From positions 1-64,000 of IMG/VR virus record IMGVR_UViG_3300027771_001853: 64,000 bases of DNA; one strand, given 5' to 3'. The position numbers and the translations under genes were made by a program. This document shows positions 15,067 to 61,495 of this stretch, in pieces. The notes beneath the pieces were generated by a model. The model was not told where the DNA came from. It saw nothing but the letters and a program-made list of their open reading frames with translations, and ran no database searches. Within the stretch, counting starts at the first letter, position 1; every line of letters starts with the position of its first letter.

Positions 15067-15110
15067 CGGAACTACAGCTATTTTTATAAATATTAACTAA
15101 TACACATTAT

Positions 15111-30936: not shown

Positions 30937-30971
30937 AACTTAAATTTTACTATACAAGTCACGAAAGTAAA

Positions 30972-31430: not shown

Positions 31431-31436
31431 AACTTT

Positions 31437-31745
31437 TTATTTATTTATAAATACCTTTAACTTTATCTTTCTCAATTCTTTTTCTACTATTGTGAAATCA
31501 TTTGCAGTTACAGATACGTTTGGGTTAAAGTATTTAGATTCTTCATATTCTTCATCTTTTATAAAACATAGAAGTTTTATGAACTTTTTTTGGTTTGGTT
31601 TCTTTTGTTTACGTAATCTAGTTAATTGTGCTGTATATCCCCCACCTATTACCTGTGAGGCAACATCGCACGCCTCTTCCCACGTAAAGTCAGCTTCGTT
31701 CCATACATGGTCAAACTCATTCCATCTACATTCAGCATTTCCCAT
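31437..31745 (-). CDS. Hypothetical phage protein
   Basis: WNE..WNE..WEE pattern. Confidence 0.6.
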   Translation of the reverse strand: MGNAECRWNEFDHVWNEADFTWEEACDVASQVIGGGYTAQLTRLRKQKKPNQKKFIKLLCFIKDEEYEESKYFNPNVSVTANDFTIVEKELRKIKLKVFINK

Positions 31746-31926
31746 CGTTTTTGTCTTTTTTAAACCAATAATCTATTACATTCTGAAATGAACTTAAAAA
31801 TCCACCTATAATAATAAACAAGAGGTCACGAGTTGTACCCATGACCTCTCGTGTAAATATACAATAGATTAGTGCAGCAAAAAGAACTAAAAACATAATA
31901 GTTATTATAGTTCTAGCTAAATCCAT
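31732..31926 (-). CDS. Small two-TM protein (holin-like)
   Basis: Two hydrophobic helices, charged C-terminus. Confidence 0.5.
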   Translation of the reverse strand: MDLARTIITIMFLVLFAALIYCIFTREVMGTTRDLLFIIIGGFLSSFQNVIDYWFKKDKNDGKC

Positions 31927-31931
31927 TTTTA

Positions 31932-32093
31932 TTATAGTTTACAACATTTAGACCCACAATTGTATGCTAGGTACGCTGCTACTACTAAAGCTGGTACGGC
32001 AACCATCCAATCACTGTGTGCCATTTCCCAACCTGCAAATAAAGCTACTGGGTAACCCAAGTAACATTTACATATGTTTAAATATTTTTCCAT
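31932..32093 (-). CDS. Small membrane protein (53 aa)
   Basis: Translated by hand (MEKYLNICKC...); fills the gap between genes. Confidence 0.5.
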   Translation of the reverse strand: MEKYLNICKCYLGYPVALFAGWEMAHSDWMVAVPALVVAAYLAYNCGSKCCKL

Positions 32094-32098
32094 GTTTT

Positions 32099-34504
32099 CT
32101 AAAATTTAGTTTTTAACGAAATTATCACATTCCTTCCTGGTGCTGATATACCTGAAGCAAATGTTCGGTAGTGCTGGTCTAGAATATTTTCTAGACTTAA
32201 TTGTAATTTAACTTTTTTGTTAAATTTATATTGAATTGAGCTATTGAGTACCCACCAAGAAGGGTACCCTTCATCGGTACCTAAATCCTCATTGTCTACC
32301 CCAGTCGAGTTCATTTCCTCAATATGTTTCCATGCAGTATAAATACCCCATATATTGTACTCTAACTTACCAGTCTTAATCTTAAATAAAGATTTACCAT
32401 ACCCTGGAGGTATATGACCTAGAGGTTCATTATTAGATACATCATAACCTCTTTGCCATGTGAATGATTCTTCGTAGAATAACCATGAATTTAATTTAGA
32501 TTTTACTCCGAATGACCAACCATATATGTAAGCTTCTGGTGAGTTCATTAATGATTGTACATTCAATTCTTCATCTTCATGTATTTGTGTGTAACCTAAA
32601 TCATGTTTTACTATCGCGTCTTTAAGGTGAGTATAGAATACGTTACCTGTTGTTTGCATTCTTTTTTTCTTCCAAGTAATACTCATTTCACCATTATAAG
32701 CGTACTCTGGTGTTAAATCAGGGTTAGGTACAACCATATTACCTTTTTTAACAAATACTTTACCATAATCATCTATATTGGGATTTCTAAAACCTGATGA
32801 TGTTACCCAATCAAACTTCCATTTTTTAGATGGTTTATAAATTAAATTAAGATTACCAGTTAATGCTCCGTTGTTGAACTCTATCTGGTCTGTAACAAAT
32901 ACTGGGTCCGTATCTCTGAATACCATATCACCAAGTACTCTTGAGTATCTTAGTCCTGCATTCCATACTATATGTTCGTTAACCTCTTTCTTGTATGAAC
33001 CATATAAAGCTGCTGTAGATAGGTTACTACCACCTGATGGGTACCTTGACTGTGTACCTTCAGTAGAGGTTGATAGTACGTTATTGTGTGTTAATTCCAT
33101 ACCGTAAACTAAATTGTCTAATGAAAAGTCCCAGTTAAAGCTAAACACATCCACATCTATGTATGTGTTATTATATTCATCTGATAGATATTTTCTAGTT
33201 ATCCTATCTTCTTCTATAAATTGGTATGCTAATGTGATGTTATGACTGTTAAATAATTTACTGGAAGTGTAAGTGTTTATATCAATAGATGACATAAATC
33301 TTGTTTGGGGACCATATGACCATTCACTCCATGTTAAGTAACCGTCTTTATACTCCTGTAAGTTATCGTACCTAGGTATGTTTGTTGTTGTAGAAAATTG
33401 GTTATTAAACCTCAAAAACACATTTTCAGATATTCTCCATGATGTATTGTTTAATAGGTCTATTTGTTTATACCCTGTACCGACTTGTGTATTTGGGTCC
33501 GTATTTTCAACCATCACACCATCTTCCATATAATGATTAACTAATCCCCAGTCAGTATAACCATGTGGTCTCCACTCCCCCATTTTTAAATCACCATATT
33601 GTTTTAAAGTAACTGAAAAGAAATTAGCTAGATTATCACCACCTATATTATTATCAACATGAATAGAAGATTCGTTAGCAGCGGTACCATATCTAAGTTC
33701 CGCACTAGTTTTAATGAATATCTTATCATTTTTACTAAACTCAGGTTTCTTTGTGTAGAAATGTACTACACCACCTAAGGCATCACTTCCATAGATTGTT
33801 GATGATGGTCCAAATACTACCTCAACTATCTCTAAAGCGTTTGGGTCTACTGTTAATGCGTTCTGTAGGTGACCTGAACGATATATAGCGTTATTCATTC
33901 TAACACCATCAACCACAAGTAAAACCCTATTAGCTTCAAACCCTCTTATGATTGGTGAACCACCACCTAATTGAGATTTCTGAATGGTTAGTCCTTGTGT
34001 TGCTGTTAGTAGGTCAGCTGTGGTAGATTGGTTTGCGTTTTCTATTTGTATAACATCAAGAGATTGTATCTGATAAGCTACATTTTCTCTTAACTCTCTT
34101 ACTTTACTAGCTGAGATTACAACATCATCTAAGTATTCCGATGATTGGTGCAATAGAATTACATAATCTTTCTTAAGCATTTCTTGTTTGGTTATGTGTC
34201 GTGTTTCATAACCAATAAAAGAAATTGATAATAAAATAACATCTGACTTAAATAAAGATAAGTCTGCTCGGCCATCTATATCTGTAGTAGTTCCTTTCAC
34301 TATAGAGTCTCTGAATGTCGTATTACTTCCAGGACTAATAAGTAATTGTTTAGAGATTATATTAGCAAATGGTATAGGTTCTAATGTTTGTTGGTCTTTT
34401 AGGGTTAATGTCTGACCACAAACCGAACCCGAACATATAAGTAAAAAGAGGATTAACAAATATCCTCCAAATAGTTTTAATTGTATTTTAGTCATCTCCC
34501 TCAT
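32099..34504 (-). CDS. TonB-dependent receptor (Bacteroidota type)
   Basis: Signal peptide; EPIPFANI/GTTTDIDG N-domain; DVVISA; plug GGGSPIIRG..DGVRMNN..IEVVFGP.S..YGSDALGG; ENILDQHY..PGRN; terminal Phe. Confidence 0.92.
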   Translation of the reverse strand: MREMTKIQLKLFGGYLLILFLLICSGSVCGQTLTLKDQQTLEPIPFANIISKQLLISPGSNTTFRDSIVKGTTTDIDGRADLSLFKSDVILLSISFIGYETRHITKQEMLKKDYVILLHQSSEYLDDVVISASKVRELRENVAYQIQSLDVIQIENANQSTTADLLTATQGLTIQKSQLGGGSPIIRGFEANRVLLVVDGVRMNNAIYRSGHLQNALTVDPNALEIVEVVFGPSSTIYGSDALGGVVHFYTKKPEFSKNDKIFIKTSAELRYGTAANESSIHVDNNIGGDNLANFFSVTLKQYGDLKMGEWRPHGYTDWGLVNHYMEDGVMVENTDPNTQVGTGYKQIDLLNNTSWRISENVFLRFNNQFSTTTNIPRYDNLQEYKDGYLTWSEWSYGPQTRFMSSIDINTYTSSKLFNSHNITLAYQFIEEDRITRKYLSDEYNNTYIDVDVFSFNWDFSLDNLVYGMELTHNNVLSTSTEGTQSRYPSGGSNLSTAALYGSYKKEVNEHIVWNAGLRYSRVLGDMVFRDTDPVFVTDQIEFNNGALTGNLNLIYKPSKKWKFDWVTSSGFRNPNIDDYGKVFVKKGNMVVPNPDLTPEYAYNGEMSITWKKKRMQTTGNVFYTHLKDAIVKHDLGYTQIHEDEELNVQSLMNSPEAYIYGWSFGVKSKLNSWLFYEESFTWQRGYDVSNNEPLGHIPPGYGKSLFKIKTGKLEYNIWGIYTAWKHIEEMNSTGVDNEDLGTDEGYPSWWVLNSSIQYKFNKKVKLQLSLENILDQHYRTFASGISAPGRNVIISLKTKF

Positions 34505-34671
34505 AGTGATGTGTTTTCTTGTACGTATTCCTCAACCACCTCAATTTCATCTTCTTTTTTAAGGACACATTCAGCACAACAACTACTAACTCCGTGGTTT
34601 ACTTGGATTGGTGTGAACCAAGTCATTAAAGCTGCCATAAATAACCCTAGTACCTGTATTGTTTTTCTCAT
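34501..34671 (-). CDS. Small secreted/membrane protein (56 aa)
   Basis: Translated by hand (MRKTIQVLGLFMAA...); overlaps both neighbours. Confidence 0.5.
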   Translation of the reverse strand: MRKTIQVLGLFMAALMTWFTPIQVNHGVSSCCAECVLKKEDEIEVVEEYVQENTSL

Positions 34672-35225
34672 TATTTACTGTTACTCATATTGAATCCTAG
34701 TATAAGTGATATTCTAGCTCCTGTTGGGTCACCACCATCTCCCCATGCAGATGATTTACCTGGTACAAATGCTATATTTACTGGAAAGTTTAAGTCTCCT
34801 GATTTGAAGTTCTTTCCTATTGTGAATACCATACCAATACCTGATAGAGATAAGTTAGGTCCTATTGCTGCTTCCATGCCATTTCCAGTTCTTATACCTA
34901 CTAGAGATGATACAGCTGGTAGAAACATTCCTTGTTCCATTCCACCTACAACAACCACCCATTCTACCAATCCTGCTACTTCACCATTGTCTACGAATCT
35001 TGTTTCCCATTGCCATCCATATTGTGATATGAATGCCATCTTCTGACCTTCTGTATAAACCTCATCAAAACCATTATATTCAGATGACCTATCATTGATA
35101 AAGTCTGCTGAACTACCATGTGTTAGTAATGTGAATCCAATTCTTGGTCCTGCTAATCTGTCTATCTGTGCATTGGCTGTTAGCAACCCTAACCCTAATG
35201 CTAATGTTAATATAATTCTTTTCAT
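34671..35225 (-). CDS. Secreted/outer-membrane protein
   Basis: Sec signal MKRIILTLALGLGLLTANA-Q; amphipathic strands. Confidence 0.7.
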   Translation of the reverse strand: MKRIILTLALGLGLLTANAQIDRLAGPRIGFTLLTHGSSADFINDRSSEYNGFDEVYTEGQKMAFISQYGWQWETRFVDNGEVAGLVEWVVVVGGMEQGMFLPAVSSLVGIRTGNGMEAAIGPNLSLSGIGMVFTIGKNFKSGDLNFPVNIAFVPGKSSAWGDGGDPTGARISLILGFNMSNSK

Positions 35226-36523
35226 TATTTTGTTTTAAATATCTTATTATTATTAATGATATACATTCCTATTGGTAAGTCAATAAAGTCAACTTTCCAT
35301 TCTCTACCTAACACATCAAATATCCTATTATCTATAGGGTTTATAAATATTACTTCTTTTATACCTACTGTGGTGTTACCTGTTTCAAATTTGATTTCTT
35401 CTTTGGAACCAAAGTCACCACCTTGTACTATCATATTACCTAAACCATCGGTAACAGTATACGAACCATTACCATAACTACAACATATACCATCCCCGTA
35501 AAAATCTTCTATCTTGAACGTCACACAAGTGTTCGGTGGGATGACTCCTGTTGATGGTGTTTGACTCATAACACCTTGTGTACTTAAATCACTATATGGT
35601 CCTCCAGTCATATAAGAAACACTACCATCACCTATCGACCATGTTGTTTCTGAACCATACATGTCTGTTACTATTGTTACAGTTATATCTGTATGGACAT
35701 TCGTTAATGGACCAACCACCTCTATATTTTCTTCATCCCCATTAGGTCTAGTGTCTGTCACACCATTTGGTGAAACAACTTTTGCTGTCCAAGTTCCTGG
35801 TGTTGTTATTAAATAATTTATTGTGAATATTGTACGACCAAAAGGTGATAGGTTTCCTTGCCATTGTTGAGTGTGGACTAGGTTACCTGATGGGTCCCTC
35901 AATTCTAATGTTGCTGATGTAAGGTTAACATACGCACTAGCGTTATATATTTCAACATCTGGTTCGTTACCATTTGTACATATCTTCATTCCTTGATGTA
36001 GTAATAGGGTTGCGTCATCATTTTGCCATTGAAAGGCTTGTGAACAATTTACCACTTCATTCCAAAATACCCATTTTTCATTTCGTTGTATCTCAGGTGC
36101 TATCCCAGTTCCACAATGTAAGAACAATGTAGGGTACCCAGCAAATGTATAATTACTAGCTACTGAACTCCCTTGATTGTTCGGGCCTATAATGGGGTAG
36201 TCAACACCAGTTATCCAATCTCCTTGGCTACCACCAGCACCTTGTAATTTAGCTATTGAAGAATTTCCGTCCCCATCAATCCAGAAAACCATAAATTCAT
36301 CTGTACCGTTTGGTCCGAAGTCGTGATACAACTCTTGCATTATATGGGCTGAGTGCCATATCCAACAAGGTCCACACCAATGTGCTGATATATCCACTAG
36401 GACTGCTTTATTAGTATGGTCTGATATGTCGTATACCACACCATTAAAATCACCAGCCATCCATGTCTGAGAATATGTAGTGAGTGTTATTACACTTAAT
36501 AGTATTATTAATAGTTTTTTCAT
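35225..36523 (-). CDS. Secreted thioredoxin-like (WCGPC) + Ig-like domain protein with T9SS-like C-terminus
   Basis: Signal peptide ending SQ; AHWCGPCW, GYPT; IFDVLGR...GMYIINNNKI tail. Confidence 0.75.
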   Translation of the reverse strand: MKKLLIILLSVITLTTYSQTWMAGDFNGVVYDISDHTNKAVLVDISAHWCGPCWIWHSAHIMQELYHDFGPNGTDEFMVFWIDGDGNSSIAKLQGAGGSQGDWITGVDYPIIGPNNQGSSVASNYTFAGYPTLFLHCGTGIAPEIQRNEKWVFWNEVVNCSQAFQWQNDDATLLLHQGMKICTNGNEPDVEIYNASAYVNLTSATLELRDPSGNLVHTQQWQGNLSPFGRTIFTINYLITTPGTWTAKVVSPNGVTDTRPNGDEENIEVVGPLTNVHTDITVTIVTDMYGSETTWSIGDGSVSYMTGGPYSDLSTQGVMSQTPSTGVIPPNTCVTFKIEDFYGDGICCSYGNGSYTVTDGLGNMIVQGGDFGSKEEIKFETGNTTVGIKEVIFINPIDNRIFDVLGREWKVDFIDLPIGMYIINNNKIFKTK

Positions 36524-36556
36524 AGTTCTTTTTTTTACGAAATTATTTATAAAAGG

Positions 36557-37894
36557 TTACAGTTTATATTTTATACCTATAGTGGTTTTATAATCTTGTA
36601 CCCCATAGTAGTTTGATATCTCACCTGATATAGCTAGAGTGAACTTCTTCCCTAATTTTAATCCTGCTTCTAGACCACCATCATACTCAAATACATTTTC
36701 TGTTGGTGCCCAATCAGCTTCCATACCAAAGGCTTTTATCGTCACATCGTTACCTGAGGTTATTGTTGCGACTCCTGGTACACTTAAGTCAGTTTGTTGT
36801 GGGTATAAGTTTATCCATGTATTAAAAAAGTATAGTTTGGATTCCGAAAAGAAATCTAAACCTATAACTGGTGAACCTGTCCATGCCCATATTCTTTTTT
36901 TAGCGTTGTATTGATTGGTAACATAAGGTTCAGACAATACAGGGTCTAGTATCTCGGTGTACGTACCAACCAGTTCTTCATTAGACCATTCATTATTATT
37001 ATCAAAATCATAAAACACATTTTGAGCTACTGAACCAGTGTCCCAGTAAGCGTTTTCATAGAACCCAATAAAATCATCTGTGTAAGCTGCCCATGGTGTT
37101 GCTCTGACATTATACCCTACCGTAAAATTTACGTTTTGGTTTACTCTATAAAGTAGTCGTATACCACCTTTAGCAAATTCCTGGTTGGACCCATAGTCTT
37201 CTATTAAAGCGTTTACCCTACTTTTATGGTCCCCTTCTAACCAAAACCCATATCGTTTAAATATTTTTGTATATCTAACATATTGTCGTGATTCGGAATA
37301 CTCCCTACCATCATTCCTAATGTAATCCCAAGTAAGTTTATATTCCACACCTTGTGAGTTAAAGGCATACGAATCCTTACCTTCATCTTTTTTTAATTCT
37401 TCATCTTTTCTACCAAATAAATTTTGTGGACATGTAACACAAGATTCACTAGCTTTCTTTTTTATCCCAAACGAATAAACATAATCATCTTTTATTGTAA
37501 GGTCCGCAAAATCTTTAGGTCTAGCAATAAACCCACCAAACTGTAATTGTATCCCAGTGAATAAATTAGTTTTACCCCATTTAATCACATCCTGACTAGT
37601 AATGTTTTTAAAATTAATACTGTCCCACATAACCTCAGCTCTAAGTTCTGCTATGGTTGGTAGTTGTATTTTTGTCCTTAATCTTAGTGTGTCTAATTTT
37701 TTAAGGTTTTTCTGACATCGGATATATTCTTTATAACATATAATAAAGTTATCTATCTTTCCTGAGTTAATGTACTCACCCAGGTATATGTTTTGTGTCT
37801 TATCCCATACAGGTAACTTAGGTTCTATACAATCTTGACTAAAACTAGTAGTGAAGAAAACAACGAATGTGATTAATAATAATAACTTTTTCAT
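36557..37894 (-). CDS. Putative outer-membrane beta-barrel protein
   Basis: Signal peptide ending SFS-Q; alternating aromatic strands; C-terminal IGIKYKL. Confidence 0.65.
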   Translation of the reverse strand: MKKLLLLITFVVFFTTSFSQDCIEPKLPVWDKTQNIYLGEYINSGKIDNFIICYKEYIRCQKNLKKLDTLRLRTKIQLPTIAELRAEVMWDSINFKNITSQDVIKWGKTNLFTGIQLQFGGFIARPKDFADLTIKDDYVYSFGIKKKASESCVTCPQNLFGRKDEELKKDEGKDSYAFNSQGVEYKLTWDYIRNDGREYSESRQYVRYTKIFKRYGFWLEGDHKSRVNALIEDYGSNQEFAKGGIRLLYRVNQNVNFTVGYNVRATPWAAYTDDFIGFYENAYWDTGSVAQNVFYDFDNNNEWSNEELVGTYTEILDPVLSEPYVTNQYNAKKRIWAWTGSPVIGLDFFSESKLYFFNTWINLYPQQTDLSVPGVATITSGNDVTIKAFGMEADWAPTENVFEYDGGLEAGLKLGKKFTLAISGEISNYYGVQDYKTTIGIKYKL

Positions 37895-37895
37895 T

Positions 37896-38273
37896 TTATT
37901 TAATTATACTTACCCCTCCAAGACTTTTTATTTGTAGTTCTATTTTCTTAAACTCAACATCTATCTCTTTGGTTATGTCAAACACCTTATCTTCTAGTGT
38001 GTTGATGGTTTTAATTTTTTTATTAAGTCTTTCCTCGACCACACCTATTTCAGTTTCTAGTTTTTCTTCCATTGTCACAAACTTTTCAAGTACCATATCA
38101 GTCTCACCTTCGAAATCTTCATCAAATGCTTTTTGTTTTTCTTCAAAAATATATATTTGATTTTTCATAGTTTGAAATTCTCCGTATATTATCCCTAAAG
38201 TGAAGACAAACCCTATTAGGGTTATCCACATCTGTGGGTCTATTTTTTGTAAGAAACTTGTTTTTTCTGCCAT
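37896..38273 (-). CDS. TM + coiled-coil protein
   Basis: Hydrophobic helix followed by heptad repeats. Confidence 0.6.
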   Translation of the reverse strand: MAEKTSFLQKIDPQMWITLIGFVFTLGIIYGEFQTMKNQIYIFEEKQKAFDEDFEGETDMVLEKFVTMEEKLETEIGVVEERLNKKIKTINTLEDKVFDITKEIDVEFKKIELQIKSLGGVSIIK

Positions 38274-38279
38274 AATATT

Positions 38280-38876
38280 TTATCTTTCTAATGTTAATTC
38301 TCTGTACTGATAATGTTCCGCAGTGAGTGGTAATTGGCCATCATATCTTCTAACATTTTCTATTACCCATTTATTTGTTGTTTTATATGTTGTTGTCCAT
38401 TCCTCAACCTCTAGTCCTAAATAATAAGTAGCTGGAACATATAAATATGTAAAATCCATTACATTACATAAGGGTTTTTCTGCTTTCCAATTCCACCCTA
38501 ATGTTGATGAATCTTGTAGTGATGAGTTATGGTTATCACCCCATCTCATATCTGATGGGTACCCTTCAGCTCTTGTGCCATATATTAAATTAAAGTCAGC
38601 AACACTATCAAAGGTTATTGTCCCTATGTTTAATGTAGAATCATTAACATATTCTACCCAAGCGGACAAATCTAATTTAAACCCTTCTTCTAACATATAA
38701 AATTTACTTATCTGCCATTCCCCAGATATCTCCGTAGGGTCTACCGCTGCTGGTAATTCAAAGGGTGTTATAGGTTCTTTTTCACAAGCACTTAAGATTA
38801 AAACCCAAAAAAGTAACATACACCCCAAGTAAATCTTAGTTAAATGGTTACTAACAAATTTATTAACGTTTTTCAT
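38280..38876 (-). CDS. Lipoprotein
   Basis: Lipobox LSA-C followed by EKE; GEWQI lipocalin-like motif. Confidence 0.7.
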   Translation of the reverse strand: MKNVNKFVSNHLTKIYLGCMLLFWVLILSACEKEPITPFELPAAVDPTEISGEWQISKFYMLEEGFKLDLSAWVEYVNDSTLNIGTITFDSVADFNLIYGTRAEGYPSDMRWGDNHNSSLQDSSTLGWNWKAEKPLCNVMDFTYLYVPATYYLGLEVEEWTTTYKTTNKWVIENVRRYDGQLPLTAEHYQYRELTLER

Positions 38877-38887
38877 ATTATAATTTT

Positions 38888-39358
38888 TTAATCTAAAGGG
38901 CCATACTTTTCACTAGCCATTGCATCACCAAAGTCTTTAGACCCCGGTAATTCAAAAGAAATATAGTAAGGGTGTTTATCATAATCTTTTGTGGTGGTTC
39001 CATAATAAGAATCAATAGAATATGATATTATGTCACCTCTTCGTGTAAGAGACAAGATTATTTCTTTTATCTTGTCCTTCCAATTACTCTGTTTAGTTGG
39101 GTCAAAAGTTGTGTCATCTGGATTATGCATTTGTAAATCTGTAGGGACCTTAATGGACTCAATTGTGTTTGGTAGTTTATCCACAAAATCTAACATCTCT
39201 TTATAGTCATTTGTTTTAAAGACATATGGGTTAGTTCTAAATTCTTCAACCTCACCTCTTCTATGGTAAGTCCCAGGAAATCCCTTTGATGATACCCTAT
39301 GGTGTTGGACAGGGTTCTTGTATTCTTCTTTTAATATATTTCTAATTAGTTTTTTCAT
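38888..39358 (-). CDS. Hypothetical phage protein with ILKE leader
   Basis: MKKLIRNILKEE. Confidence 0.7.
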   Translation of the reverse strand: MKKLIRNILKEEYKNPVQHHRVSSKGFPGTYHRRGEVEEFRTNPYVFKTNDYKEMLDFVDKLPNTIESIKVPTDLQMHNPDDTTFDPTKQSNWKDKIKEIILSLTRRGDIISYSIDSYYGTTTKDYDKHPYYISFELPGSKDFGDAMASEKYGPLD

Positions 39359-42300
39359 TGTTTAATTACTTTATGGTTAATTATCATACCTCTAAAGGTA
39401 ATTCTTAAATCGTATATTCCAGCTGGTAAGTTAATCATATCTATTTCTTTAGCTTTTTCTTTATATATAAGATGATTCCCAAACATATCATAAACGTTAA
39501 CATCTATATCTTCTTTTGTTTTAATATTTATTTTATCTCTAGTAGGATTTGGGTAAACCACTACTTTATTTCTACCCATATCCTCCAAACCTAAAGGGCT
39601 TCCAAAGGTACAATAATCATATTGTGACTGACAAAAAGCGTCCCATTGATTATTAAGACAGTACGGGTCTACCTCATAAACTACCCAAGCGTAACACGTA
39701 TCATTTAACCAGTAAGGTAATCCAACACCCGTTACTGTATTCACATCGTAATATAAACATGAACCATCATCAGTGTTAGCGTTCTGGTCGTAGTTATTTA
39801 CTGTCACAGTACTAAATCCTGGTATATAATTAGTATATGTACTATATAGATACCCTTGGAAGTCATATCCGTCCGTACACCCTAAGACTGTCGCTATGCA
39901 AGTCCCATTATCTGTATTAACTAATGGGTCGTAGTTGAATGCTGTTGAATCCATACACCCATACATAAATGGGATACACGGGTTAGTTATGTCTGTCTCA
40001 CTTACTTGATTTGTGTTAGCTGAAACGTCGTAGTTAAACATTGTGTTATCCATACACCCATACATAAACGGGACACAACTCCCATTATCTGTATTAGCTA
40101 ATGGGTCATAGTTAAACATCAATGAGTCCGTACAACCATATGTAAATGGTACACAACTCCCATTATCCACATTAACCGTTGGGTTATAGTTAAACATTGT
40201 GTTGTCCATACACCCATAAACAACCAAATTTAAACAACTTCCGTTATCAAAATCCGCTGTAAATCCTTGATTATAAAATTCTAGATATAAAGGGTCAGTA
40301 CAACCTGGGTTATAATAACAACTATTATCGTTTGTATTAGATAGTGGGTTCCAGTTAGAAGCTGTCACATCAGTACACCCATAAATGTAAGCTACACATG
40401 AACCATTATCTGTATTAACTAATGGGTTATAGTTAAACATTGTGGAATCAGTACAACCATAAATGTAAGCTACACAACTAAAGTCATCTGTATTAGCACT
40501 AGGATTAAAATTTAGTGCTGTAGGGTCAGTACAACCCTCTATAACTGAAACACAGGTACCGTTATCCGCATTGGCTACAGGGTCGTAGTTGAACGCGGAG
40601 GTATCAGTACAACCATAAATAAAAGTTATACAAGAACCATTATCCGTGTTTGCTGTTGGGTTATAATTAAACATTGTGTTGTCTGTACAACCATTAATAA
40701 ATGGTACACAGGAACCATCATTCACATTTGCATTAACATTAAAGTTAAACATTGTTGGGTCCGTACACCCTAGGAAAGGATAAACACAACCACTATTAGT
40801 GTTAGCTAAACTATCGTAATTTAAAGCTGTCTGGTCTGTACACCCAATCACCACTGGCATACACGAACCATCGTCAGTATTTGCATTTACATTGAAATTA
40901 AAAGCGGTTGGGTTTGTACAACCTAGGATTGGGTAGATACACCCACTATTAGTGTTAGCTAAAGAGTCGTAATTCATTGCCGTTATATCAGTACAACCAA
41001 TAACAACAGAGACACAAGTACCGTCATCTGTATTTGCGTTTACATCATAGTTAAAGGCTATTGGGTCTGTACACCCTAATATTGGGTAAACACAACCTGA
41101 ATTTGTATTTGCTGTGGAATCAAAATTAAGAGCAGTCGGGTCCGTACATCCAATAACAACAGAAACACAACTATTATCATTAGTATTTGCACTAACATTG
41201 AAATTAAAGGCTGTCTGGTCTGTACAACCTAATATTACTGGTACACACGAACCATTGTTTGTGTTTGCTGGTGGGTCATAATTAAATGCGAGAATATCTG
41301 TACAACCAAATACGATTGGGTAACAAGAACCATCCTCGGTATTGGCAGCTGCATTATAATTAAACATTGTATCATCCATACACCCTAATATTACTGGAAT
41401 ACATGATGATGGGTCGTTTGTGTTTGCTGAAGGGTTAAAGTTGAATGCCGTTGAGTCCATACATCCAATTATGGTAGCTACACAATTACCATCGTCAACA
41501 TTTGCTAATGGGTCGTAATTGAAGGCTAGTGTATTTGTACACCCTAATACTATTGTAATACAATTACCATCTGGCATATTGGCTAACGAATTATAATTTA
41601 ATGCGGTTACATCCATACAACCAAGTATTCCTGGTGTACAGTAATTACCACATTGTGGAATTGAGTTGTATTTGTAAGGGAATTGTATCATTGGGTCTGT
41701 CCAAGAATTAGTCCCTCCTGATAATGTAGTGTCACCTTCAGGTCCTATTAAATAAAACCCACATTGATTTGCTGTTGTCTCAGAATTACCTTGAGTAAAG
41801 AACATTATATCTACTGGACTGGATGAACTTAGGTTAATTGTATATGAATTACTTGCCCCGTCAGAAGGTCCCATTGTATATGGTCCTAATATTGTTGTAC
41901 CTTGTAATACACCCAACCAACTTCCAAACCAACCATCTTGTGCACCATCAGTTATTACTAATGTATAATCACAATTTGGGACTAGGGACATTGTGTTCGC
42001 TGATGAGTCATAGTCTGGTGATGTTATATCTGTACAACCTAATACTACTGGTGTTAAACAAGAACCGTCATCTGTGTTTGCTTGTGGGTTATATTCTGTA
42101 AATCCTGGAGTTGTACAACCTGGAATTGAATTTGGTGTACAAGGTTGGACGGTGTATGTCACACTTGTATCCATCCCAAAGTCTGCATTACCTGGTAGTA
42201 TGGCCATTATAGTGTCCCCACATAACGTTTGAACTAGTACTGTTCCGTCAACCCCACCATAACAAGTTCCACACATACCATCACCAAAACCATCATATAA

Positions 42301-43320
42301 GTTAAAATTAATTACTGTTCCATTTGGTACACATGTCTCTGTAATTATAGGAACTCCTGTTATTGAGTAGCTTGGGGAACTTACTAATACTATTCCATTA
42401 GTGTCTGTTATTTCCCATGAAGTTTCTCCTGGGTACGTATCTGGTATTACTGTTACAACTATATTTGATTCCCCATTTATACAATTAGCTGGTGGAGCTT
42501 GACATGAACCGTCAGGGGTATTAGCCCAAGGGTTGTAGTTTAATGCGGTAGGGTCTGTACAACCAAGAATACATTCTCCAGTTGTAATAACTAAAGTATC
42601 TGTATAACTTGAGTCAGCTAGCATACCTAAAAAATAATATGTAGTGTTTGGTTGTTGGTTAGAATACATCAACCCTGTATTTGAAAAGTTTCCGGGATAA
42701 GGATACCAATTGTTTCCTAAATCATATGGGTTATCTGATTTCGTATATGAGGCCATTCTACAACTCAGGTTTGCCATGTTTGACCAATGGTAATAAACCA
42801 CATTCCCAGCAACGTTACAATAAGTTTCTACCCAAAAAGTGTCTAAACCATTACATGGAGGATACACACATGAACCATCATCAAAATCGGATAATGAATC
42901 GTAGTTTAATGCTAACGTATCTAAACAACCCCCAACTGGTGGAGCACATGGTGCAATAATTAATGTTTGTGTATATAAAGCACCGAAATCATCTTCAATA
43001 AAAGCTAGAGTATCTGCACAACTAGTATCTGTTACTGTAATACTACCTCCTGGGCAGCAATATCCGTCGCTAAAAGCATCGTATACATTTAAAGTATAAG
43101 TACCGTTAACTACAGAGTCAATGAATATAGTTGTATCTGCTTGACCAAACCAATAGTCACCAGGTAATGCAAATGCTAAAGTGTCTCCGTATGCGTCTAA
43201 AATTTCCCAAGAAGTTTCTTGAGCGTAGTTGTCGAATTTAAAATCAACCTTTATTTGTGTTTGTGTGAACCCTAAAAAAGGTATCAGTAATGTTGTTATA
43301 TATAGAAAAATGTTTCTCAT
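39355..43320 (-). CDS. Large Cys-rich repeat protein with T9SS type A sorting domain
   Basis: Signal peptide; about 27 GCxDxxAxNYxxxANTDDGSC repeats; C-terminal VYPNPTRD..YDMFG..LPAGIY..KVIKQ. Confidence 0.88.
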   Translation of the reverse strand: MRNIFLYITTLLIPFLGFTQTQIKVDFKFDNYAQETSWEILDAYGDTLAFALPGDYWFGQADTTIFIDSVVNGTYTLNVYDAFSDGYCCPGGSITVTDTSCADTLAFIEDDFGALYTQTLIIAPCAPPVGGCLDTLALNYDSLSDFDDGSCVYPPCNGLDTFWVETYCNVAGNVVYYHWSNMANLSCRMASYTKSDNPYDLGNNWYPYPGNFSNTGLMYSNQQPNTTYYFLGMLADSSYTDTLVITTGECILGCTDPTALNYNPWANTPDGSCQAPPANCINGESNIVVTVIPDTYPGETSWEITDTNGIVLVSSPSYSITGVPIITETCVPNGTVINFNLYDGFGDGMCGTCYGGVDGTVLVQTLCGDTIMAILPGNADFGMDTSVTYTVQPCTPNSIPGCTTPGFTEYNPQANTDDGSCLTPVVLGCTDITSPDYDSSANTMSLVPNCDYTLVITDGAQDGWFGSWLGVLQGTTILGPYTMGPSDGASNSYTINLSSSSPVDIMFFTQGNSETTANQCGFYLIGPEGDTTLSGGTNSWTDPMIQFPYKYNSIPQCGNYCTPGILGCMDVTALNYNSLANMPDGNCITIVLGCTNTLAFNYDPLANVDDGNCVATIIGCMDSTAFNFNPSANTNDPSSCIPVILGCMDDTMFNYNAAANTEDGSCYPIVFGCTDILAFNYDPPANTNNGSCVPVILGCTDQTAFNFNVSANTNDNSCVSVVIGCTDPTALNFDSTANTNSGCVYPILGCTDPIAFNYDVNANTDDGTCVSVVIGCTDITAMNYDSLANTNSGCIYPILGCTNPTAFNFNVNANTDDGSCMPVVIGCTDQTALNYDSLANTNSGCVYPFLGCTDPTMFNFNVNANVNDGSCVPFINGCTDNTMFNYNPTANTDNGSCITFIYGCTDTSAFNYDPVANADNGTCVSVIEGCTDPTALNFNPSANTDDFSCVAYIYGCTDSTMFNYNPLVNTDNGSCVAYIYGCTDVTASNWNPLSNTNDNSCYYNPGCTDPLYLEFYNQGFTADFDNGSCLNLVVYGCMDNTMFNYNPTVNVDNGSCVPFTYGCTDSLMFNYDPLANTDNGSCVPFMYGCMDNTMFNYDVSANTNQVSETDITNPCIPFMYGCMDSTAFNYDPLVNTDNGTCIATVLGCTDGYDFQGYLYSTYTNYIPGFSTVTVNNYDQNANTDDGSCLYYDVNTVTGVGLPYWLNDTCYAWVVYEVDPYCLNNQWDAFCQSQYDYCTFGSPLGLEDMGRNKVVVYPNPTRDKINIKTKEDIDVNVYDMFGNHLIYKEKAKEIDMINLPAGIYDLRITFRGMIINHKVIKQ
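39757..41622 (-). repeat. About 23 tandem ~75-81-bp coding repeats
   Basis: GC[TM]D...N[YF]...[AV]N[TV]xxGxC units counted in the translation. Confidence 0.85.
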
Positions 43321-43336: not shown

Positions 43337-43343
43337 ATAAATA
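43337..43343 (-). promoter_or_regulatory. Phage TATTTAT motif
   Basis: Upstream of the secreted-protein cassette. Confidence 0.45.
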
Positions 43344-47580: not shown

Positions 47581-48099
47581 TTACTTTACGATAATAAATT
47601 TCTTTTGGTTTCTAATGTACATCACTCCTTTAGTTGGGTTAATTACTTCTCTACCCATTAAGTCATACATTACATTGTTAGCACCTTCATTCTTCATTAA
47701 CTCTTCGATTCCAGTTGGGTTACCCATATTCATTAGTACCCACGTATCAGTCATGAAATCATATACTAATGAATCACAATAATTACAAATATAAGTCATG
47801 GAGTCAAAATATATAAAAGCATCGTAACATAATTTAACAGTGTCTTGTGGGGTTATAAGTGGAAATGAGTATGGGTCGTTACCTTGTGGTATATAACAAG
47901 TTAATGCATTACATGCTGAAAAATTCCAATCTATAGAATCTACTATATTAATTATTCCAGGTGCGTTTCCTGTTACTGTTAATGTATTCCAGGTTGTACT
48001 GTCTACTACTATCGAATATGATAGTGAGTCACAAGGAATCATTTGTGCTTGTGTTTGTAGTCCAAGCGAGACTAATACTACTAGTAAAAATTTCTTCAT
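47581..48099 (-). CDS. Secreted protein with T9SS-like C-terminus
   Basis: Signal peptide ending QA-Q; TGIEE..MYDLMGRE..KGVMYIRNQKKFII. Confidence 0.7.
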   Translation of the reverse strand: MKKFLLVVLVSLGLQTQAQMIPCDSLSYSIVVDSTTWNTLTVTGNAPGIINIVDSIDWNFSACNALTCYIPQGNDPYSFPLITPQDTVKLCYDAFIYFDSMTYICNYCDSLVYDFMTDTWVLMNMGNPTGIEELMKNEGANNVMYDLMGREVINPTKGVMYIRNQKKFIIVK

Positions 48100-61069: not shown

Positions 61070-61495
61070 ATGAAAAAATTGATTTTAACATCCGCTATAG
61101 CATTCGCAACGTTATTTGCTTCAGCTCAGAATTTCATGGTCGTAACGACTTTTGATGGGGACCAAGAAGAAACTATGGATAAAGTATCACAAAACTTAGG
61201 TTTTGGTTACGCTTTAAACAACACATGGACTTTAGGTTTGATTCAAGCTGGAGAAGATATTGATGGTGAAATGACTTACGACTTATTTGGTCGTTACAAT
61301 TGGAACAAAGACATGTATGTATCTTTTCAAGCACCTACAGAAGAAACTATGGACAACTTAACTGTTGGACTTGGTTATTCTTACAATGTATGGAAAGGTC
61401 TTAATGTTGAACCAAACTATAGTATGGGATTAAAAGAAGATGAGGACGGAGAAAGAGAGGGAACTTTCAATCTTGGTTTATCATATAAATTCTAA
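61070..61495 (+). CDS. Small outer-membrane beta-barrel protein
   Basis: Signal peptide ending ASA-Q; amphipathic strands; C-terminal FNLGLSYKF. Confidence 0.78.
   Translation: MKKLILTSAIAFATLFASAQNFMVVTTFDGDQEETMDKVSQNLGFGYALNNTWTLGLIQAGEDIDGEMTYDLFGRYNWNKDMYVSFQAPTEETMDNLTVGLGYSYNVWKGLNVEPNYSMGLKEDEDGEREGTFNLGLSYKF

What the first reader, a model, noticed from the sequence alone, without database searches (positions are those of the whole stretch)
32099..43320. Phage-encoded cell-surface cassette: TonB receptor, beta-barrels, lipoprotein and T9SS substrates
Seen: co-oriented, often overlapping genes encode a full TonB-dependent receptor, two putative OM proteins, a lipoprotein, a secreted WCGPC thioredoxin/Ig protein and a 1321-aa Cys-rich T9SS cargo. 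Most signal peptides are followed by Gln, the Bacteroidota Q-rule. Related genes sit at 47581-48099 and 61070-61495. A phage-leader gene (38888) lies inside the cassette and a TATTTAT motif heads it, so it is integrated into the phage programme. Inference: the phage uses the host T9SS/BAM to remodel the infected cell's surface, for nutrient or iron uptake, adhesion, or superinfection/grazing protection. The secreted thioredoxin could fold the disulfide-rich repeat protein.
Basis: partly seen in the sequence, partly recalled or inferred. Interest (0 to 1): 0.7.

Follow-up and report, generated by a model that had tools for sequence, protein, structure and literature searches.

The report
Jumbo-phage operon for host-surface proteins
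A 298-kb marine phage that infects Bacteroidota carries a conserved operon, driven by its own promoter motif, for an outer-membrane TonB-dependent transporter, a phage-only beta-barrel, a lipoprotein and a secreted repeat protein; this is a clear example of a recently recognised habit of huge phages to re-equip the envelope of the cell they infect.

Summary
All genes in window 32099-43320 lie on the minus strand and are tightly packed. They encode a complete TonB-dependent receptor (Plug, barrel, conserved TonB box), a 12-stranded OM barrel (445 aa), a lipoprotein (198 aa), a membrane-anchored probable coiled-coil protein (125 aa), a WCGPC thioredoxin-like exported protein and a 1321-aa cargo. 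The cargo has a canonical T9SS type-A tail and 26 Cys-rich repeats.

The contig is a T4-like jumbo phage (gp23-like capsid, baseplate, tail lysozyme, class II RNR). The cassette is not chimeric:
- Contigs from independent marine metagenomes span its junctions with no mismatches and flat depth.
- Related phage contigs of 232 and 273 kb, plus Tara contigs of 77-80 kb, carry the same five-gene core at 56-88% identity, with dN/dS 0.05-0.23.
- The same GATATTTAT motif sits 23 nt before the first gene. TATTTAT is the phage's most enriched upstream 7-mer.

The barrel and lipoprotein families are phage-only. The nearest cellular TBDR is about 40% identical. The thioredoxin/184-aa/56-aa trio is a separate mobile module.

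Function is inferred. TonB-dependent uptake plus surface display is most likely; receptor masking is the main rival. Phage-encoded TBDRs, OMPs and T9SS cargoes are already published, so this is a new variant of a known kind.

The parts
43337..43343 (-). TATTTAT promoter-like motif (in GATATTTAT), 23 nt upstream of the cargo start codon
   Evidence: It is the most enriched upstream 7-mer in the genome (before 70 of 296 genes, 10 times expectation, peak 20-27 nt before ATG). The same GATATTTAT lies at the same distance in L003 and L005.
39355..43320 (-). 1321-aa T9SS type-A cargo. It has a signal peptide (GFT|Q), three N-terminal Cys-rich domains, about 22 tandem 26-aa repeats (26 GC[TM]D starts in all) of the form GCTDxxAxNYNxxANxDDGSC, and a C-terminal sorting domain (residues 1255-1321).
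   Evidence: PF18962 2.8e-11 and TIGR04183 2.4e-10, both above cut-off. Repeats listed. Homologues head the operon in L003, L005, L020 and L023. dN/dS 0.19-0.23.
38888..39358 (-). 156-aa non-secreted ORFan, specific to this lineage (N-terminus MKKLIRNILKEE)
   Evidence: No family hit. Absent from L003 and L005. Its 90% cluster has 2 members. Three other phage proteins match a loose N-terminal pattern for this motif.
38280..38876 (-). 198-aa lipoprotein (lipobox LSAC; mature N-terminus C-E-K-E-P)
   Evidence: Cys31, E32, K33 and P35 are invariant in 22 homologues (E34 is D in one), and every homologue found is at least 58% identical with no cellular name. Embedding neighbours are Bacteroidota lipocalin-like/DUF5004 lipoproteins; this is a lead only. 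The AF2 model is too poor to use (pLDDT 47.5).
37896..38273 (-). 125-aa bitopic membrane protein: an N-terminal TM helix and a charged, heptad-like C-terminal part read as coiled coil. It is the most conserved gene of the core.
   Evidence: Sequence. It is 80-88% identical in relatives, with dN/dS 0.05-0.12. Only weak hits to DUF2130 and assorted helical families. Embedding neighbours are virus-only clusters.
36557..37894 (-). 445-aa phage-specific outer-membrane protein: signal peptide (SFS|Q), helical N-domain (about residues 38-112), and a 12-stranded-type beta-barrel (about residues 113-445)
   Evidence: AF2 pLDDT 60. VIA-align Z 11-14 to autotransporter beta-domains, Tsx, KdgM and NanC. 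Foldseek matches OmpG, FapF and autotransporters. The nearest ESM-atlas folds are virus-only clusters. A profile search of 1.84 billion representatives found no clear cellular homologue: one full-length cluster, fragments, and two borderline hits of unchecked origin.
35225..36523 (-). 432-aa exported thioredoxin-like protein (signal peptide TYS|Q, WCGPC). It has a middle domain shared with the cargo and a shortened CTD-like tail.
   Evidence: Thioredoxin hit is sub-threshold (20.4 bits). It is 35% identical to the phage's own cytoplasmic thioredoxin at 56534-56851, which hits Pfam Thioredoxin at 2e-31. Residues 275-379 align to cargo 282-389 (E 3e-5). The tail against the cargo CTD gives z=5.2. 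Absent from L003 and L005 but present in L023 and L026.
34671..35225 (-). 184-aa exported protein (signal peptide ANA|Q); putative small OM protein with unverified fold
   Evidence: No family or PDB hit. It is 95-98% identical in otherwise diverged phage contigs L023 and L026. Its 90% cluster has 213 members. Depth is 20-80 times the phage baseline, with many variant unitigs, in four runs.
34501..34671 (-). 56-aa small protein with a hydrophobic N-terminus and a CCAEC motif; it overlaps the TBDR start (ATGA)
   Evidence: It travels with the 184-aa gene in L023 and L026 (76-77% identity).
32099..34504 (-). 801-aa TonB-dependent receptor: signal peptide (VCG|Q), CarboxypepD_reg-like N-domain, TonB box DDVVISAS (residues 125-132), plug, barrel, and a C-terminal Phe
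   Evidence: A clade at 47-99% identity sits on marine contigs up to 280 kb, while the next cellular TBDRs are about 40% identical. dN/dS 0.10-0.16.
31732..32093 (-). Two small conserved flank genes (53 aa and a 64-aa TM protein), beginning 5 nt after the TBDR stop
   Evidence: Both are conserved next to the TBDR in L003/L004; L005/L006/L020 keep the 64-aa gene, and the 53-aa gene matches only weakly in L006. One unitig in each of runs X2 and X3 spans 29500-34704 with 0 mismatches.
47581..48099 (-). 172-aa exported protein (signal peptide plus Q) that shares the short CTD-like tail with the thioredoxin protein
   Evidence: Its homologue lies between the thioredoxin and 184-aa genes in L026.
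61070..61495 (+). 141-aa exported protein (signal peptide ASA|Q); probably a small OM barrel ending in YKF
   Evidence: OMP_b-brl 6e-5, below cut-off. TATTTAT lies 8 nt upstream.

Best explanation
The region is a phage-owned envelope operon in a T4-like jumbo phage (298 kb) that infects marine Bacteroidota, probably Flavobacteriia.

A phage promoter-like element (GATATTTAT) probably drives one transcript. Its products leave the cytoplasm through the host Sec system and are then sorted by host machinery:
- BAM would insert the TonB-dependent receptor and the phage-specific 12-stranded barrel into the outer membrane.
- The Lol pathway would place the lipoprotein.
- The T9SS would export the 1321-aa repeat protein to the cell surface.
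- The 125-aa protein would stay anchored in the inner membrane, with a coiled coil reaching into the periplasm.

Most likely role (inferred): the infected cell gains an extra TonB-energised import route for a scarce ligand, together with a surface-displayed capture or adhesion fibre. The receptor's nearest subfamily is the haem/haemoglobin type, so a metal-tetrapyrrole or similar compound is the first guess. This would support a long jumbo-phage infection that needs cofactors; the phage encodes a B12-type class II RNR and an Fe/Mn SOD.

The thioredoxin/184-aa/56-aa trio and the 156-aa ORF are later insertions into this core. They belong to a pool of exported-protein genes that shuffle among related phages.

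Shown: gene identities, export signals, phage ownership, conservation, purifying selection, contiguity.
Inferred: the single transcript, where each protein ends up, the ligand, and the benefit to the phage.
For: The contig is a phage:
- gp23-like capsid protein (phrog_138, 3e-68), whose best cultured match is Flavobacterium phage immuto.
- Baseplate wedge, DnaB and RNR, and a tail lysozyme with M23 peptidase.
- It is classed as an IMG/VR virus record, 93% complete.

The host is Bacteroidota:
- Every clear SPI-type signal peptide (13 by my count) is followed by Gln. This is the Q-rule (PMC5837995).
- The genome has both type-A and type-B T9SS tails.

The phage owns the cassette:
- The five-gene core and its small flank genes recur in L003 (273-kb contig), L005/L006 (Tara) and the IMG/VR record G001 (232 kb). 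G001 also has a capsid protein 72% identical to this phage's.
- dN/dS is 0.05-0.23 with dS above 1.
- The promoter-like motif is conserved upstream of the cargo gene.
- The barrel family has no clear cellular relative in an exhaustive profile search, and every lipoprotein homologue found is at least 58% identical with no cellular name.
- Unitigs from four studies cover 29500-34704 and 36068-40798 with 0 mismatches at the phage's flat depth.

The transporter looks competent:
- The TonB box [DEQN]-V/I-V/I-[IV]-S-x-[SN]-K is conserved down to members only 48% identical.
- Many plug residues are invariant, and most members end in an aromatic residue (Phe or Tyr).
- The nearest subfamily is TIGR01785 TonB-hemin, matched full-length at 212 bits. 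The best PDB hits are PhuR and ShuA.

The phage needs cofactors: its RNR carries the B12-type insertion domain, and it encodes an Fe/Mn SOD.

Precedents exist: TBDRs in Lak phages and Mar_Mega_1, and transport-linked OMPs in huge phages (bioRxiv 10.64898/2026.10.24.761521; PMC9723777).
Against: - No expression data; no RNA run was listed.
- The ligand is unknown. The TBDR scores below the haem-family cut-off (212 against 317 bits). It also lacks a His between its FRNP and NPDL motifs, where, from memory, haem receptors have one.
- No matching periplasmic or inner-membrane importer is encoded nearby.
- A related lineage (L023) keeps the cargo, a distantly similar barrel and a TM coiled-coil protein. 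No TBDR or lipoprotein was found in the 14.5 kb of it that I fetched. The constant function of the island may therefore be surface display rather than uptake.
- Gene content at this locus varies between lineages, which is more typical of host-interaction or arms-race loci than of metabolic genes.
- The TATTTAT motif also heads many large, probably structural genes. If it is a late promoter, uptake would start late in infection.
- The barrel model has only moderate confidence (pLDDT 60) and the lipoprotein model is unusable.
Confidence: 0.5

Rival explanations
1. Receptor masking or superinfection exclusion. The exported proteins change the infected cell's surface so that further phages, or the phage's own progeny, no longer adsorb. 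The T9SS fibre and the new OM proteins would cover or bind the receptor, much as lambda Lom blocks LamB or T5 Llp blocks FhuA.
For: - The cargo's 26-aa Cys repeats also occur in three non-secreted, probably virion-associated phage proteins (G000 179660-181570, 118671-122090, 170155-171687). The secreted protein could therefore bind what virion fibres bind.
- The locus is a variable island with alternative OM-protein sets in different lineages, which fits an arms-race locus.
- The recent preprint on huge-phage OMPs favours this idea and cites Lom-LamB.
Against: - A decoy or mask would not need a conserved TonB box and plug, yet both are strongly conserved.
- The repeats may be no more than a generic stalk module.
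- No adsorption data exist.
Confidence: 0.25
2. Cargo-display system with the TBDR as an add-on. The constant unit is the T9SS cargo, the 12-stranded barrel and the TM coiled-coil protein. The barrel anchors or escorts the fibre at the surface, a role like that of SprF for SprB. The purpose would be adhesion, aggregation or particle attachment of infected cells.
For: - In the part of L023 that I fetched, a cargo (65% identity) sits next to a 363-aa OM protein and a 94-aa TM/coiled-coil protein, with no TBDR or lipoprotein. The 363-aa protein aligns to the barrel profile over 278 columns (25% identity, E=0.004).
- The nearest structural neighbours of the barrel are virus-only clusters of 350-362 aa.
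Against: - The hhalign probability is low (8%).
- The two TM/coiled-coil proteins show no sequence similarity.
- The cargo has a type-A tail, not the type-B tail that pairs with PorP/SprF proteins.
- The barrel has no PorP_SprF Pfam hit.
Confidence: 0.15
3. Part of the cassette is a lysis device. The 198-aa lipoprotein and the adjacent 125-aa TM/coiled-coil protein would form a two-component spanin that fuses the inner and outer membranes at lysis.
For: - The 125-aa protein has the i-spanin layout, with an N-terminal TM helix and a coiled-coil periplasmic part.
- The neighbouring gene encodes a lipoprotein with a Pro-rich mature N-terminus.
- In T4-like phages, lysis genes are scattered around the genome.
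Against: - The mature lipoprotein is about 168 aa, far larger than typical o-spanins.
- Its C-E-K-E-P start partly resembles the Bacteroidota surface-export signal C-X-K-(D/E)2-X (PMC5080379).
- There is no holin or endolysin nearby. The peptidoglycan-binding, endolysin-like gene is 17 kb away on the other strand.
- No PHROG spanin hit.
Confidence: 0.07
4. Assembly chimera or host contamination: the block is host DNA wrongly joined to a phage contig.
For: - TBDRs are typical cellular genes. PHROG 5687 and the small 'Bacteriophage sp.' records that hit the plug may themselves be contaminants.
- Unitigs break inside the 184-aa gene and inside the cargo repeats.
Against: - The same module with the same phage flanks occurs in at least four independent assemblies, including a 273-kb contig and a 232-kb IMG/VR record with a related capsid gene.
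- Depth is flat and unitigs cross both TBDR borders and the genes from 445 aa to the cargo with no mismatches.
- GC content matches the rest of the phage.
- The promoter-like motif upstream is the phage's own.
- The nearest cellular TBDR is only about 40% identical.
- The unitig breaks are explained by a widely shared gene and by internal repeats.
Confidence: 0.02

Closest known systems
TonB-dependent receptors and other beta-barrel OMPs encoded by huge phages (Lak phage cluster HP2985; Yuan & Chen, bioRxiv 10.64898/2026.10.24.761521)
   Same: A large phage of a Bacteroidota host encodes a 22-stranded TBDR plus further OM barrels. Envelope and transport genes cluster around them. The roles proposed there are uptake or receptor interference.
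   Different: This case is marine and the phage is T4-like rather than Lak. The TBDR sits in a conserved operon with a T9SS cargo, a lipoprotein, a TM coiled-coil protein and a barrel family found only in phages. That paper's main text mentions neither the T9SS nor lipoproteins. Transcription was shown there but not here.
Mar_Mega_1 marine megaphage 'SusC' TBDR (PMC9723777)
   Same: A marine large phage with a putative TBDR, read as an auxiliary gene for uptake.
   Different: That gene was called SusC-like and proposed for carbohydrate uptake. Here no SusC signature model appears among the NCBIfam hits, and there is no SusD partner. No operon context was described there.
Cryoconite 'Cryophage' T9SS cargo proteins (PMC7468147)
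   Same: Phage genes with T9SS type-A sorting domains, presumed to hijack the host T9SS. The cargo genes vary between phage variants.
   Different: Those cargoes are enzymes (endoglucanase, GH39, PA14). Here the cargo is a non-enzymatic Cys-repeat fibre co-transcribed with OM proteins and a TBDR.
Bacteroidota TBDR plus surface-lipoprotein uptake complexes (SusCD, BtuB-BtuG, HmuR-HmuY)
   Same: A TBDR with an N-terminal CarboxypepD_reg-like extension is encoded beside a lipoprotein, and T9SS-secreted partners are common in Flavobacteria.
   Different: The lipoprotein matches no SusD, BtuG or HmuY family. The two genes are not adjacent. The complex prediction gave no answer. The closest cellular TBDRs stand alone without such partners.
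Phage superinfection-exclusion envelope proteins (lambda Lom, T5 Llp)
   Same: These are phage-encoded OM barrel or lipoprotein genes expressed in the infected cell that alter receptor availability.
   Different: They are single small proteins that bind a host receptor. Here there is an 11-kb multi-gene set that includes an apparently transport-competent TBDR.
Cyanophage PstS and the cyanophage OMP-like family (PF24653 / IPR056410)
   Same: T4-like marine phages carry envelope or periplasmic nutrient-acquisition genes. Embedding search places the 445-aa barrel near this family (score 0.91).
   Different: There is no Pfam hit to PF24653. The barrel size and the host phylum are different.

Membership tests
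TonB-dependent receptor (TBDR) superfamily | N-terminal plug domain (PF07715) | tested here: met
   73.8 bits against a cut-off of 23.9, residues 141-246.
TonB-dependent receptor (TBDR) superfamily | C-terminal 22-stranded barrel domain (PF00593) | tested here: met
   96 bits against a cut-off of 27, residues 361-774. The protein ends in Phe.
TonB-dependent receptor (TBDR) superfamily | TonB box ahead of the plug | tested here: met
   DDVVISAS at residues 125-132. The pattern is conserved in all 16 clade members aligned. The consensus used for comparison is from general knowledge.
SusC/SusD-type polysaccharide utilisation pair | SusC/RagA signature model, and an adjacent SusD-family lipoprotein | tested here: not met
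   No SusC/RagA model appears among the 23 NCBIfam hits at E<=0.01. No SusD-family hit for any cassette protein.
Haem/haemoglobin TBDR subfamily (TIGR01785) | Score above the curated cut-off | tested here: not met
   212 bits against a cut-off of 316.85, although the match is full-length (1-677 of 677) and is the best-scoring family.
Haem/haemoglobin TBDR subfamily (TIGR01785) | Conserved His between the FRAP-like and NPNL-like boxes (feature recalled from the literature on HemR/HmuR) | tested here: not met
   FRNP and NPDL are present with the expected spacing, but no member has a His between them; K/R occupies that region.
T9SS type-A cargo | Sec signal peptide plus a C-terminal sorting domain (TIGR04183 / PF18962) above cut-off | tested here: met
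   Met for the 1321-aa protein: 40.3 bits (cut-off 23) and 44 bits (cut-off 27). NOT met for the 432-aa protein, which has no HMM hit and only a shortened look-alike tail.
T9SS type-A cargo | Secretion depends on a host T9SS | not testable with these tools
   The host is unknown. This needs expression in a wild-type strain and a T9SS mutant.
PorP/SprF-type barrel partnered with an adjacent T9SS cargo | PorP_SprF family match, and a cargo with a type-B CTD | tested here: not met
   The 445-aa protein has no Pfam hit even at E<=5. The cargo tail is type A. A PorP/SprF model is only rank 19 among the Foldseek hits, with TM below 0.3.
12-stranded OM beta-barrel fold (autotransporter translocator / Tsx / KdgM class) | Structural match over the whole barrel | tested here: met
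   Z 11.6-14.2, with 167-248 residues aligned to AaaA, Tsx, KdgM, NalP and NanC. The model is only pLDDT 60, so the strand count is approximate.
Bacterial lipoprotein (SPII substrate) | Lipobox with an invariant Cys after a hydrophobic signal segment | tested here: met
   L-S-A-C31, with the Cys invariant in 22 homologues.
Bacteroidota surface-exposed lipoprotein | Lipoprotein export signal C-X-K-(D/E)2-X (PMC5080379) | tested here: inconclusive
   The mature start C-E-K-E-P has K at +3 and an acidic residue at +2 and +4, but Pro at +5.
Two-component spanin | i-spanin (TM plus periplasmic coiled coil) with a small OM lipoprotein o-spanin, usually near lysis genes | tested here: inconclusive
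   The 125-aa protein fits the i-spanin layout. The lipoprotein is about three times the usual o-spanin size. There is no lysis gene nearby and no PHROG spanin hit.
Thioredoxin fold oxidoreductase | Family HMM above cut-off and a CxxC active site | tested here: inconclusive
   WCGPC is present. Pfam gives 20.4 against 23.5 bits, and TIGR01068 gives 20 against 96.8 bits. PDB thioredoxins match at E 0.01-0.4. It is 35% identical to the phage's own thioredoxin over 68 aa.

The most novel reading that the evidence does not exclude
A family of abundant marine jumbo phages carries a self-contained, virus-evolved envelope system. Its parts are a T9SS-displayed Cys-repeat fibre built from the same modules as virion proteins, a phage-only 12-stranded barrel, a periplasm-spanning coiled-coil protein, a lipoprotein and a transport-competent TBDR. 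Together they would work as one trans-envelope machine that both captures and imports a scarce cofactor for the infected cell and masks the phage's own receptor. It would be the first virus-encoded multi-component outer-membrane uptake and display apparatus. It would sit in a hot spot where exported-protein modules are swapped between phages.
Probability: 0.2. Interest if true: 0.8.

Novelty: new variant of a known kind. Interest (0 to 1): 0.58.

Why it matters
Phage-encoded envelope proteins are only now being recognised as a major interface between huge phages and their hosts. This locus offers a well-defined example that can be tested:
- It is a conserved operon found in near-identical form (share of sampled words 0.2-0.96) in about twenty public marine, sediment and sponge sequencing runs.
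- It uses three Bacteroidota-specific sorting routes at once: the Q-rule Sec pathway, lipoprotein sorting and the T9SS.
- Two of its protein families have no detectable cellular relatives.

If the TBDR imports a cofactor, phages would be altering trace-nutrient fluxes of infected marine Flavobacteria. If the set masks receptors, it is a new multi-protein exclusion strategy. Either way, the phage-only barrel and the 26-aa Cys repeat are new structural families worth solving.

Tried and rejected
- Scan of viral contigs with the single TBDR protein: nothing found. The alignment-based scan found one IMG/VR relative.
- tblastn of the TBDR against 50,697 phage records: only partial plug hits in unannotated faecal 'Bacteriophage sp.' fragments and misfiled Salmonella records. 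No full-length match among cultured phages.
- tblastn of the 184-aa protein against the phage records: no match.
- Pfam, NCBIfam and PHROGs at lax thresholds for the 184-, 198-, 445- and 156-aa proteins: nothing.
- PDB sequence and profile searches for the 184-aa protein and for alignments A1 and A2: nothing meaningful.
- AF2 model of the lipoprotein: pLDDT 47.5, so unusable, and no fold search was run on it.
- Complex prediction for the TBDR (residues 120-801) with the mature lipoprotein: no verdict. This is not evidence either way.
- RNA runs holding the TBDR gene: none was listed, so expression could not be examined.
- Sigma-70-type promoter scan over the cassette: fewer sites than in shuffles (49 against 61.5), so uninformative.
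- The genome search on the ENA contigs behind L003 and L005: records not held.
- Neighbourhoods of the closest cellular TBDRs (P0077, P0102): no shared partner genes, so no clue to the ligand.
- Searches for a phage TonB, ExbB or ExbD: none found.
- B12 uptake: considered because the phage RNR is B12-type. Not adopted as the leading ligand, because the BtuB models match only the plug, at 46-92 bits against cut-offs of 600-836.

Full report
WHAT IS THERE

The window is the first 64 kb of a 297,623-bp IMG/VR virus record, with CheckV completeness of 93%. Between 32099 and 43320 every sizeable ORF lies on the minus strand. The gaps between genes are -4, 11, 6, 1, 33 and -1 nt. One gap of 166 nt holds a further 56-aa ORF that overlaps the next start codon. 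In order of transcription the genes are:
- a 1321-aa protein with a signal peptide and a canonical T9SS type-A sorting domain (PF18962 at 44 bits, TIGR04183 at 40.3 bits, both above cut-off);
- a 156-aa non-secreted ORFan;
- a 198-aa lipoprotein;
- a 125-aa protein with one N-terminal TM helix and a charged C-terminal part that I read as coiled coil;
- a 445-aa exported protein;
- a 432-aa exported protein with a WCGPC motif;
- a 184-aa exported protein;
- the 56-aa ORF;
- an 801-aa TonB-dependent receptor with a CarboxypepD_reg-like N-domain, a Plug and a barrel.

Is the contig a phage?

Yes. Outside the window it has:
- a gp23-like major head protein (phrog_138, 3e-68), whose best cultured relatives are Flavobacterium phage immuto, a Microcystis phage and Rhodothermus phage RM378;
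- a baseplate wedge protein, a DnaB helicase, an SbcC-like nuclease and an RNR. The RNR carries the B12-type insertion domain.

Inside the window, the cassette is flanked by:
- a tail lysozyme/M23 protein next to a 3602-aa ORF, and an Fe/Mn SOD;
- a tail-fibre-like 626-aa protein and a peptidoglycan-binding, endolysin-like protein;
- a phage thioredoxin.

By my own greedy ORF call, coding density is 96% and most genes share one strand. The GC content of the cassette (0.33-0.37) matches the rest of the window.

Host signal

By my reading of the heuristic list, all 13 clear SPI-type signal peptides in the genome are followed by Gln. This is the Bacteroidetes Q-rule (PMC5837995, PMC10653852). The genome also has a type-B T9SS tail (CHU_C, 50.6 bits) at 290 kb. 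A Bacteroidota host, probably a marine flavobacterium, is therefore very likely.

IS IT REALLY PART OF THE PHAGE?

Four lines of evidence say so.

1. Homologue distribution and synteny. Homologues of the TBDR form a tight clade at 47-99% identity on marine contigs, several of them 120-280 kb long. The next, cellular, TBDRs drop to about 40% identity. The core order is cargo, 198 aa, 125 aa, 445 aa, TBDR, followed by the same small flank genes. This order recurs in:
   - a 273.5-kb contig (L003), at mid-contig;
   - Tara contigs (L005, L006);
   - a 232-kb IMG/VR record (G001/L020), which also encodes a capsid protein 72% identical to this phage's.

2. Selection. All five core genes are under purifying selection, with dN/dS of 0.05-0.23 and synonymous sites near saturation.

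3. Promoter motif. TATTTAT is the most enriched 7-mer in the 80 nt upstream of genes: it precedes 70 of 296 genes, ten times expectation, with a peak 20-27 nt before the ATG. GATATTTAT sits 23 nt before the cargo ATG in the window, in L003 and in L005. No other copy occurs inside the cassette, so one transcript is likely.

4. Contiguity in independent samples. Logan unitigs from four marine runs of four different studies cover 29500-34704 and 36068-40798 with zero mismatches, at the phage's flat depth. The only breaks are inside the 184-aa gene, at a short spot in the thioredoxin gene, and in the cargo repeats.

The chimera hypothesis is effectively refuted.

THE INDIVIDUAL PROTEINS

TBDR (801 aa). 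It looks transport-competent. The TonB box (DDVVISAS, residues 125-132) is conserved across the clade. Long runs of plug residues are invariant, and most members end in an aromatic residue, Phe or Tyr. Its best family is the haem/haemoglobin TBDR subfamily. The match is full-length, but at 212 bits it is below the 317-bit cut-off. The best solved relatives are PhuR and ShuA. It has FRNP and NPDL boxes but no His between them. It is not SusC-like, and no SusD is present. The phage has no TonB, ExbB or ExbD, so host energy coupling is required.

445-aa protein. It folds, with moderate confidence (pLDDT 60), into N-terminal helices followed by a barrel. The barrel matches 12-stranded OM barrels with Z 11-14; these are autotransporter translocators, Tsx, KdgM and NanC. 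Foldseek agrees. Its closest predicted-structure neighbours are virus-only clusters. A profile search of 1.84 billion representatives found only its own family plus two borderline hits.

198-aa lipoprotein. Every homologue found is at least 58% identical, comes from metagenome contigs and carries no cellular name. Cys31, E32, K33 and P35 of the mature start C-E-K-E-P are invariant, and E34 is D in one sequence. This start only partly fits the Bacteroidota surface-export signal. Embedding search points to lipocalin-like lipoproteins, as a lead only. The AF2 model failed.

125-aa TM protein. It is the most conserved gene of the core (80-88% identity) and has only virus-cluster neighbours.

Cargo (1321 aa). 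It has 75 Cys and 26 repeat starts of the form GCTDxxAxNYNxxANxDDGSC. The same repeat occurs in three phage proteins without signal peptides (636, 1139 and 510 aa). These are probably virion components, but that is an inference.

TWO MODULES, NOT ONE

The 432-aa thioredoxin-like gene, the 184-aa gene and the 56-aa ORF are absent from L003, L005 and L020. They recur together, at 74%, 95-98% and 76-77% identity, in two other phage contexts:
- L023, a 268-kb contig. In the 14.5 kb fetched, it has the cargo, a distantly barrel-like 363-aa OM protein and a 94-aa TM/coiled-coil protein, but no TBDR or lipoprotein homologue.
- L026, where the trio sits in a different neighbourhood, with a homologue of the window's 172-aa gene inserted between the thioredoxin and 184-aa genes, giving four genes in a row.

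The 184-aa gene belongs to a 213-member 90% cluster. In four runs it shows 20-80 times the phage's depth, with many variant unitigs. It is therefore shared almost unchanged by more abundant relatives.

The locus is thus a variable island of exported-protein genes. In this phage the thioredoxin module has been inserted into the TBDR core.

The thioredoxin protein shares one domain with the cargo (E 3e-5). It also has a shortened CTD-like tail, which it shares with the 172-aa protein at 47581 and a 335-aa protein at 155 kb. The T9SS models do not recognise this tail.

HOW IT MOST LIKELY WORKS

Shown: export signals of Bacteroidota type, phage ownership, conservation.

Inferred: after transcription from the phage promoter-like element, host machinery places the products. 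Sec, BAM and Lol would put the TBDR, the barrel and the lipoprotein in the outer membrane. The T9SS would put the repeat protein on the surface. The coiled-coil protein would stay in the inner membrane.

I favour, at about 0.5, an uptake-plus-display role, for three reasons:
- the transporter features of the TBDR are conserved;
- the phage needs cofactors (B12-type RNR, Fe/Mn SOD);
- comparable phage uptake genes are known (PMC9723777; bioRxiv 10.64898/2026.10.24.761521).

Rival readings are:
- receptor masking or superinfection exclusion (0.25), supported by the repeat sharing with probable virion proteins and by the variable gene content;
- a cargo-display system in which the TBDR is optional (0.15);
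- a spanin pair formed by the lipoprotein and the coiled-coil protein (0.07);
- an assembly chimera (0.02).

COMPARISON WITH WHAT IS KNOWN, AND NOVELTY

Three earlier reports cover the general phenomenon:
- Phage T9SS cargoes were reported in 2020 as a unique case (PMC7468147).
- A TBDR in a marine megaphage was reported in 2021 (PMC9723777).
- An October 2026 preprint catalogues 1,603 OMPs in huge phages. They include transcribed TBDRs in Lak phages, with neighbouring transport genes.

What is new here:
- the conserved operon that joins a T9SS cargo, a phage-only barrel, a lipoprotein, a coiled-coil protein and a TBDR under a phage promoter motif;
- the evidence that these genes have evolved for a long time inside phages;
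- the modular island.

I rate it a new variant of a known kind, with interest 0.58.

Noticed in passing
window 34671-35225 (and 34501-34671): The 184-aa gene is 95-98% identical at protein level in phage contigs whose other genes are only 50-75% identical. Its 90% cluster has 213 members. In four marine runs its depth is 20-80 times the phage baseline, with many variant unitigs. It looks like a gene that spread recently among related phages, or one under extreme constraint. The 56-aa CCAEC ORF always accompanies it.
   Followed up: partly
G000 179660-181570, 118671-122090, 170155-171687 (L012:15660-17570, L009:14671-18090, L012:6155-7687): Three Cys-rich phage proteins without signal peptides carry the same 26-aa GCTDxxAxNYNxxAxxDDGSC repeat as the secreted cargo; the 636-aa one has 60 Cys. 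The 636-aa and 1139-aa proteins have no Pfam family (the 510-aa one was scanned only against PHROGs, without a hit). They may be virion fibres or decoration proteins.
   Followed up: partly
genome-wide; e.g. window 43337-43343, 15067-15100, 31431-31460: TATTTAT, usually as (A/G)TATTTAT(A/T), lies 20-27 nt before the start codon of about a quarter of all genes, including many giant ORFs. It is probably this phage's main promoter element. It resembles the T4 late promoter TATAAATA but differs from it. Its timing class is unknown.
   Followed up: partly
G000 290040-291744 (L018): Three adjacent small exported proteins (176, 180 and 187 aa, all signal peptide plus Gln). One has a T9SS type-B CHU_C tail (50.6 bits), and the homologue of another in L026 is annotated PKD_6. 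In L026 the trio sits next to the DUF2828 gene, so exported-protein genes move around within these genomes.
   Followed up: partly
window 4258-15066 and G000 187576-201114: Two giant ORFs of 3602 and 4512 aa. The first lies next to a tail lysozyme/M23/PG-binding protein (2878-4254) and is preceded by TATTTAT.
   Followed up: no
window 16211-16870; G000 130935-132854: The phage encodes an Fe/Mn superoxide dismutase, which is conserved in relatives. It also encodes a ribonucleotide reductase with the B12-dependent (class II) insertion domain.
   Followed up: partly
window 48483-49916: A 477-aa protein matches phrog_850 'RNA-binding protein' (7e-152) and Pfam DUF2828/DUF7788. It is 91% identical in L026.
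   Followed up: no
window 38888-39358, 17523-18398; G000 205844-206674, 270394-270987: Four proteins match a loose pattern near the N-terminus (within the first 45 aa); the first three share a clear MK-x-[LI]-I-[KR]-x-[IV]-L-[KR]-E motif (in the third after an upstream alternative start), while the fourth carries only an internal look-alike, LVRKVLKE. The meaning of the motif is unknown.
   Followed up: partly
L023 2732-4110: In a related 268-kb contig, the cargo is followed by a 363-aa OM protein (ending RVF) and a 94-aa TM/coiled-coil protein. In the 14.5 kb fetched these take the place of the lipoprotein, 125-aa, 445-aa and TBDR set. So the pairing of a barrel with a bitopic coiled-coil protein recurs in a form that is not recognisably homologous.
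   Followed up: partly
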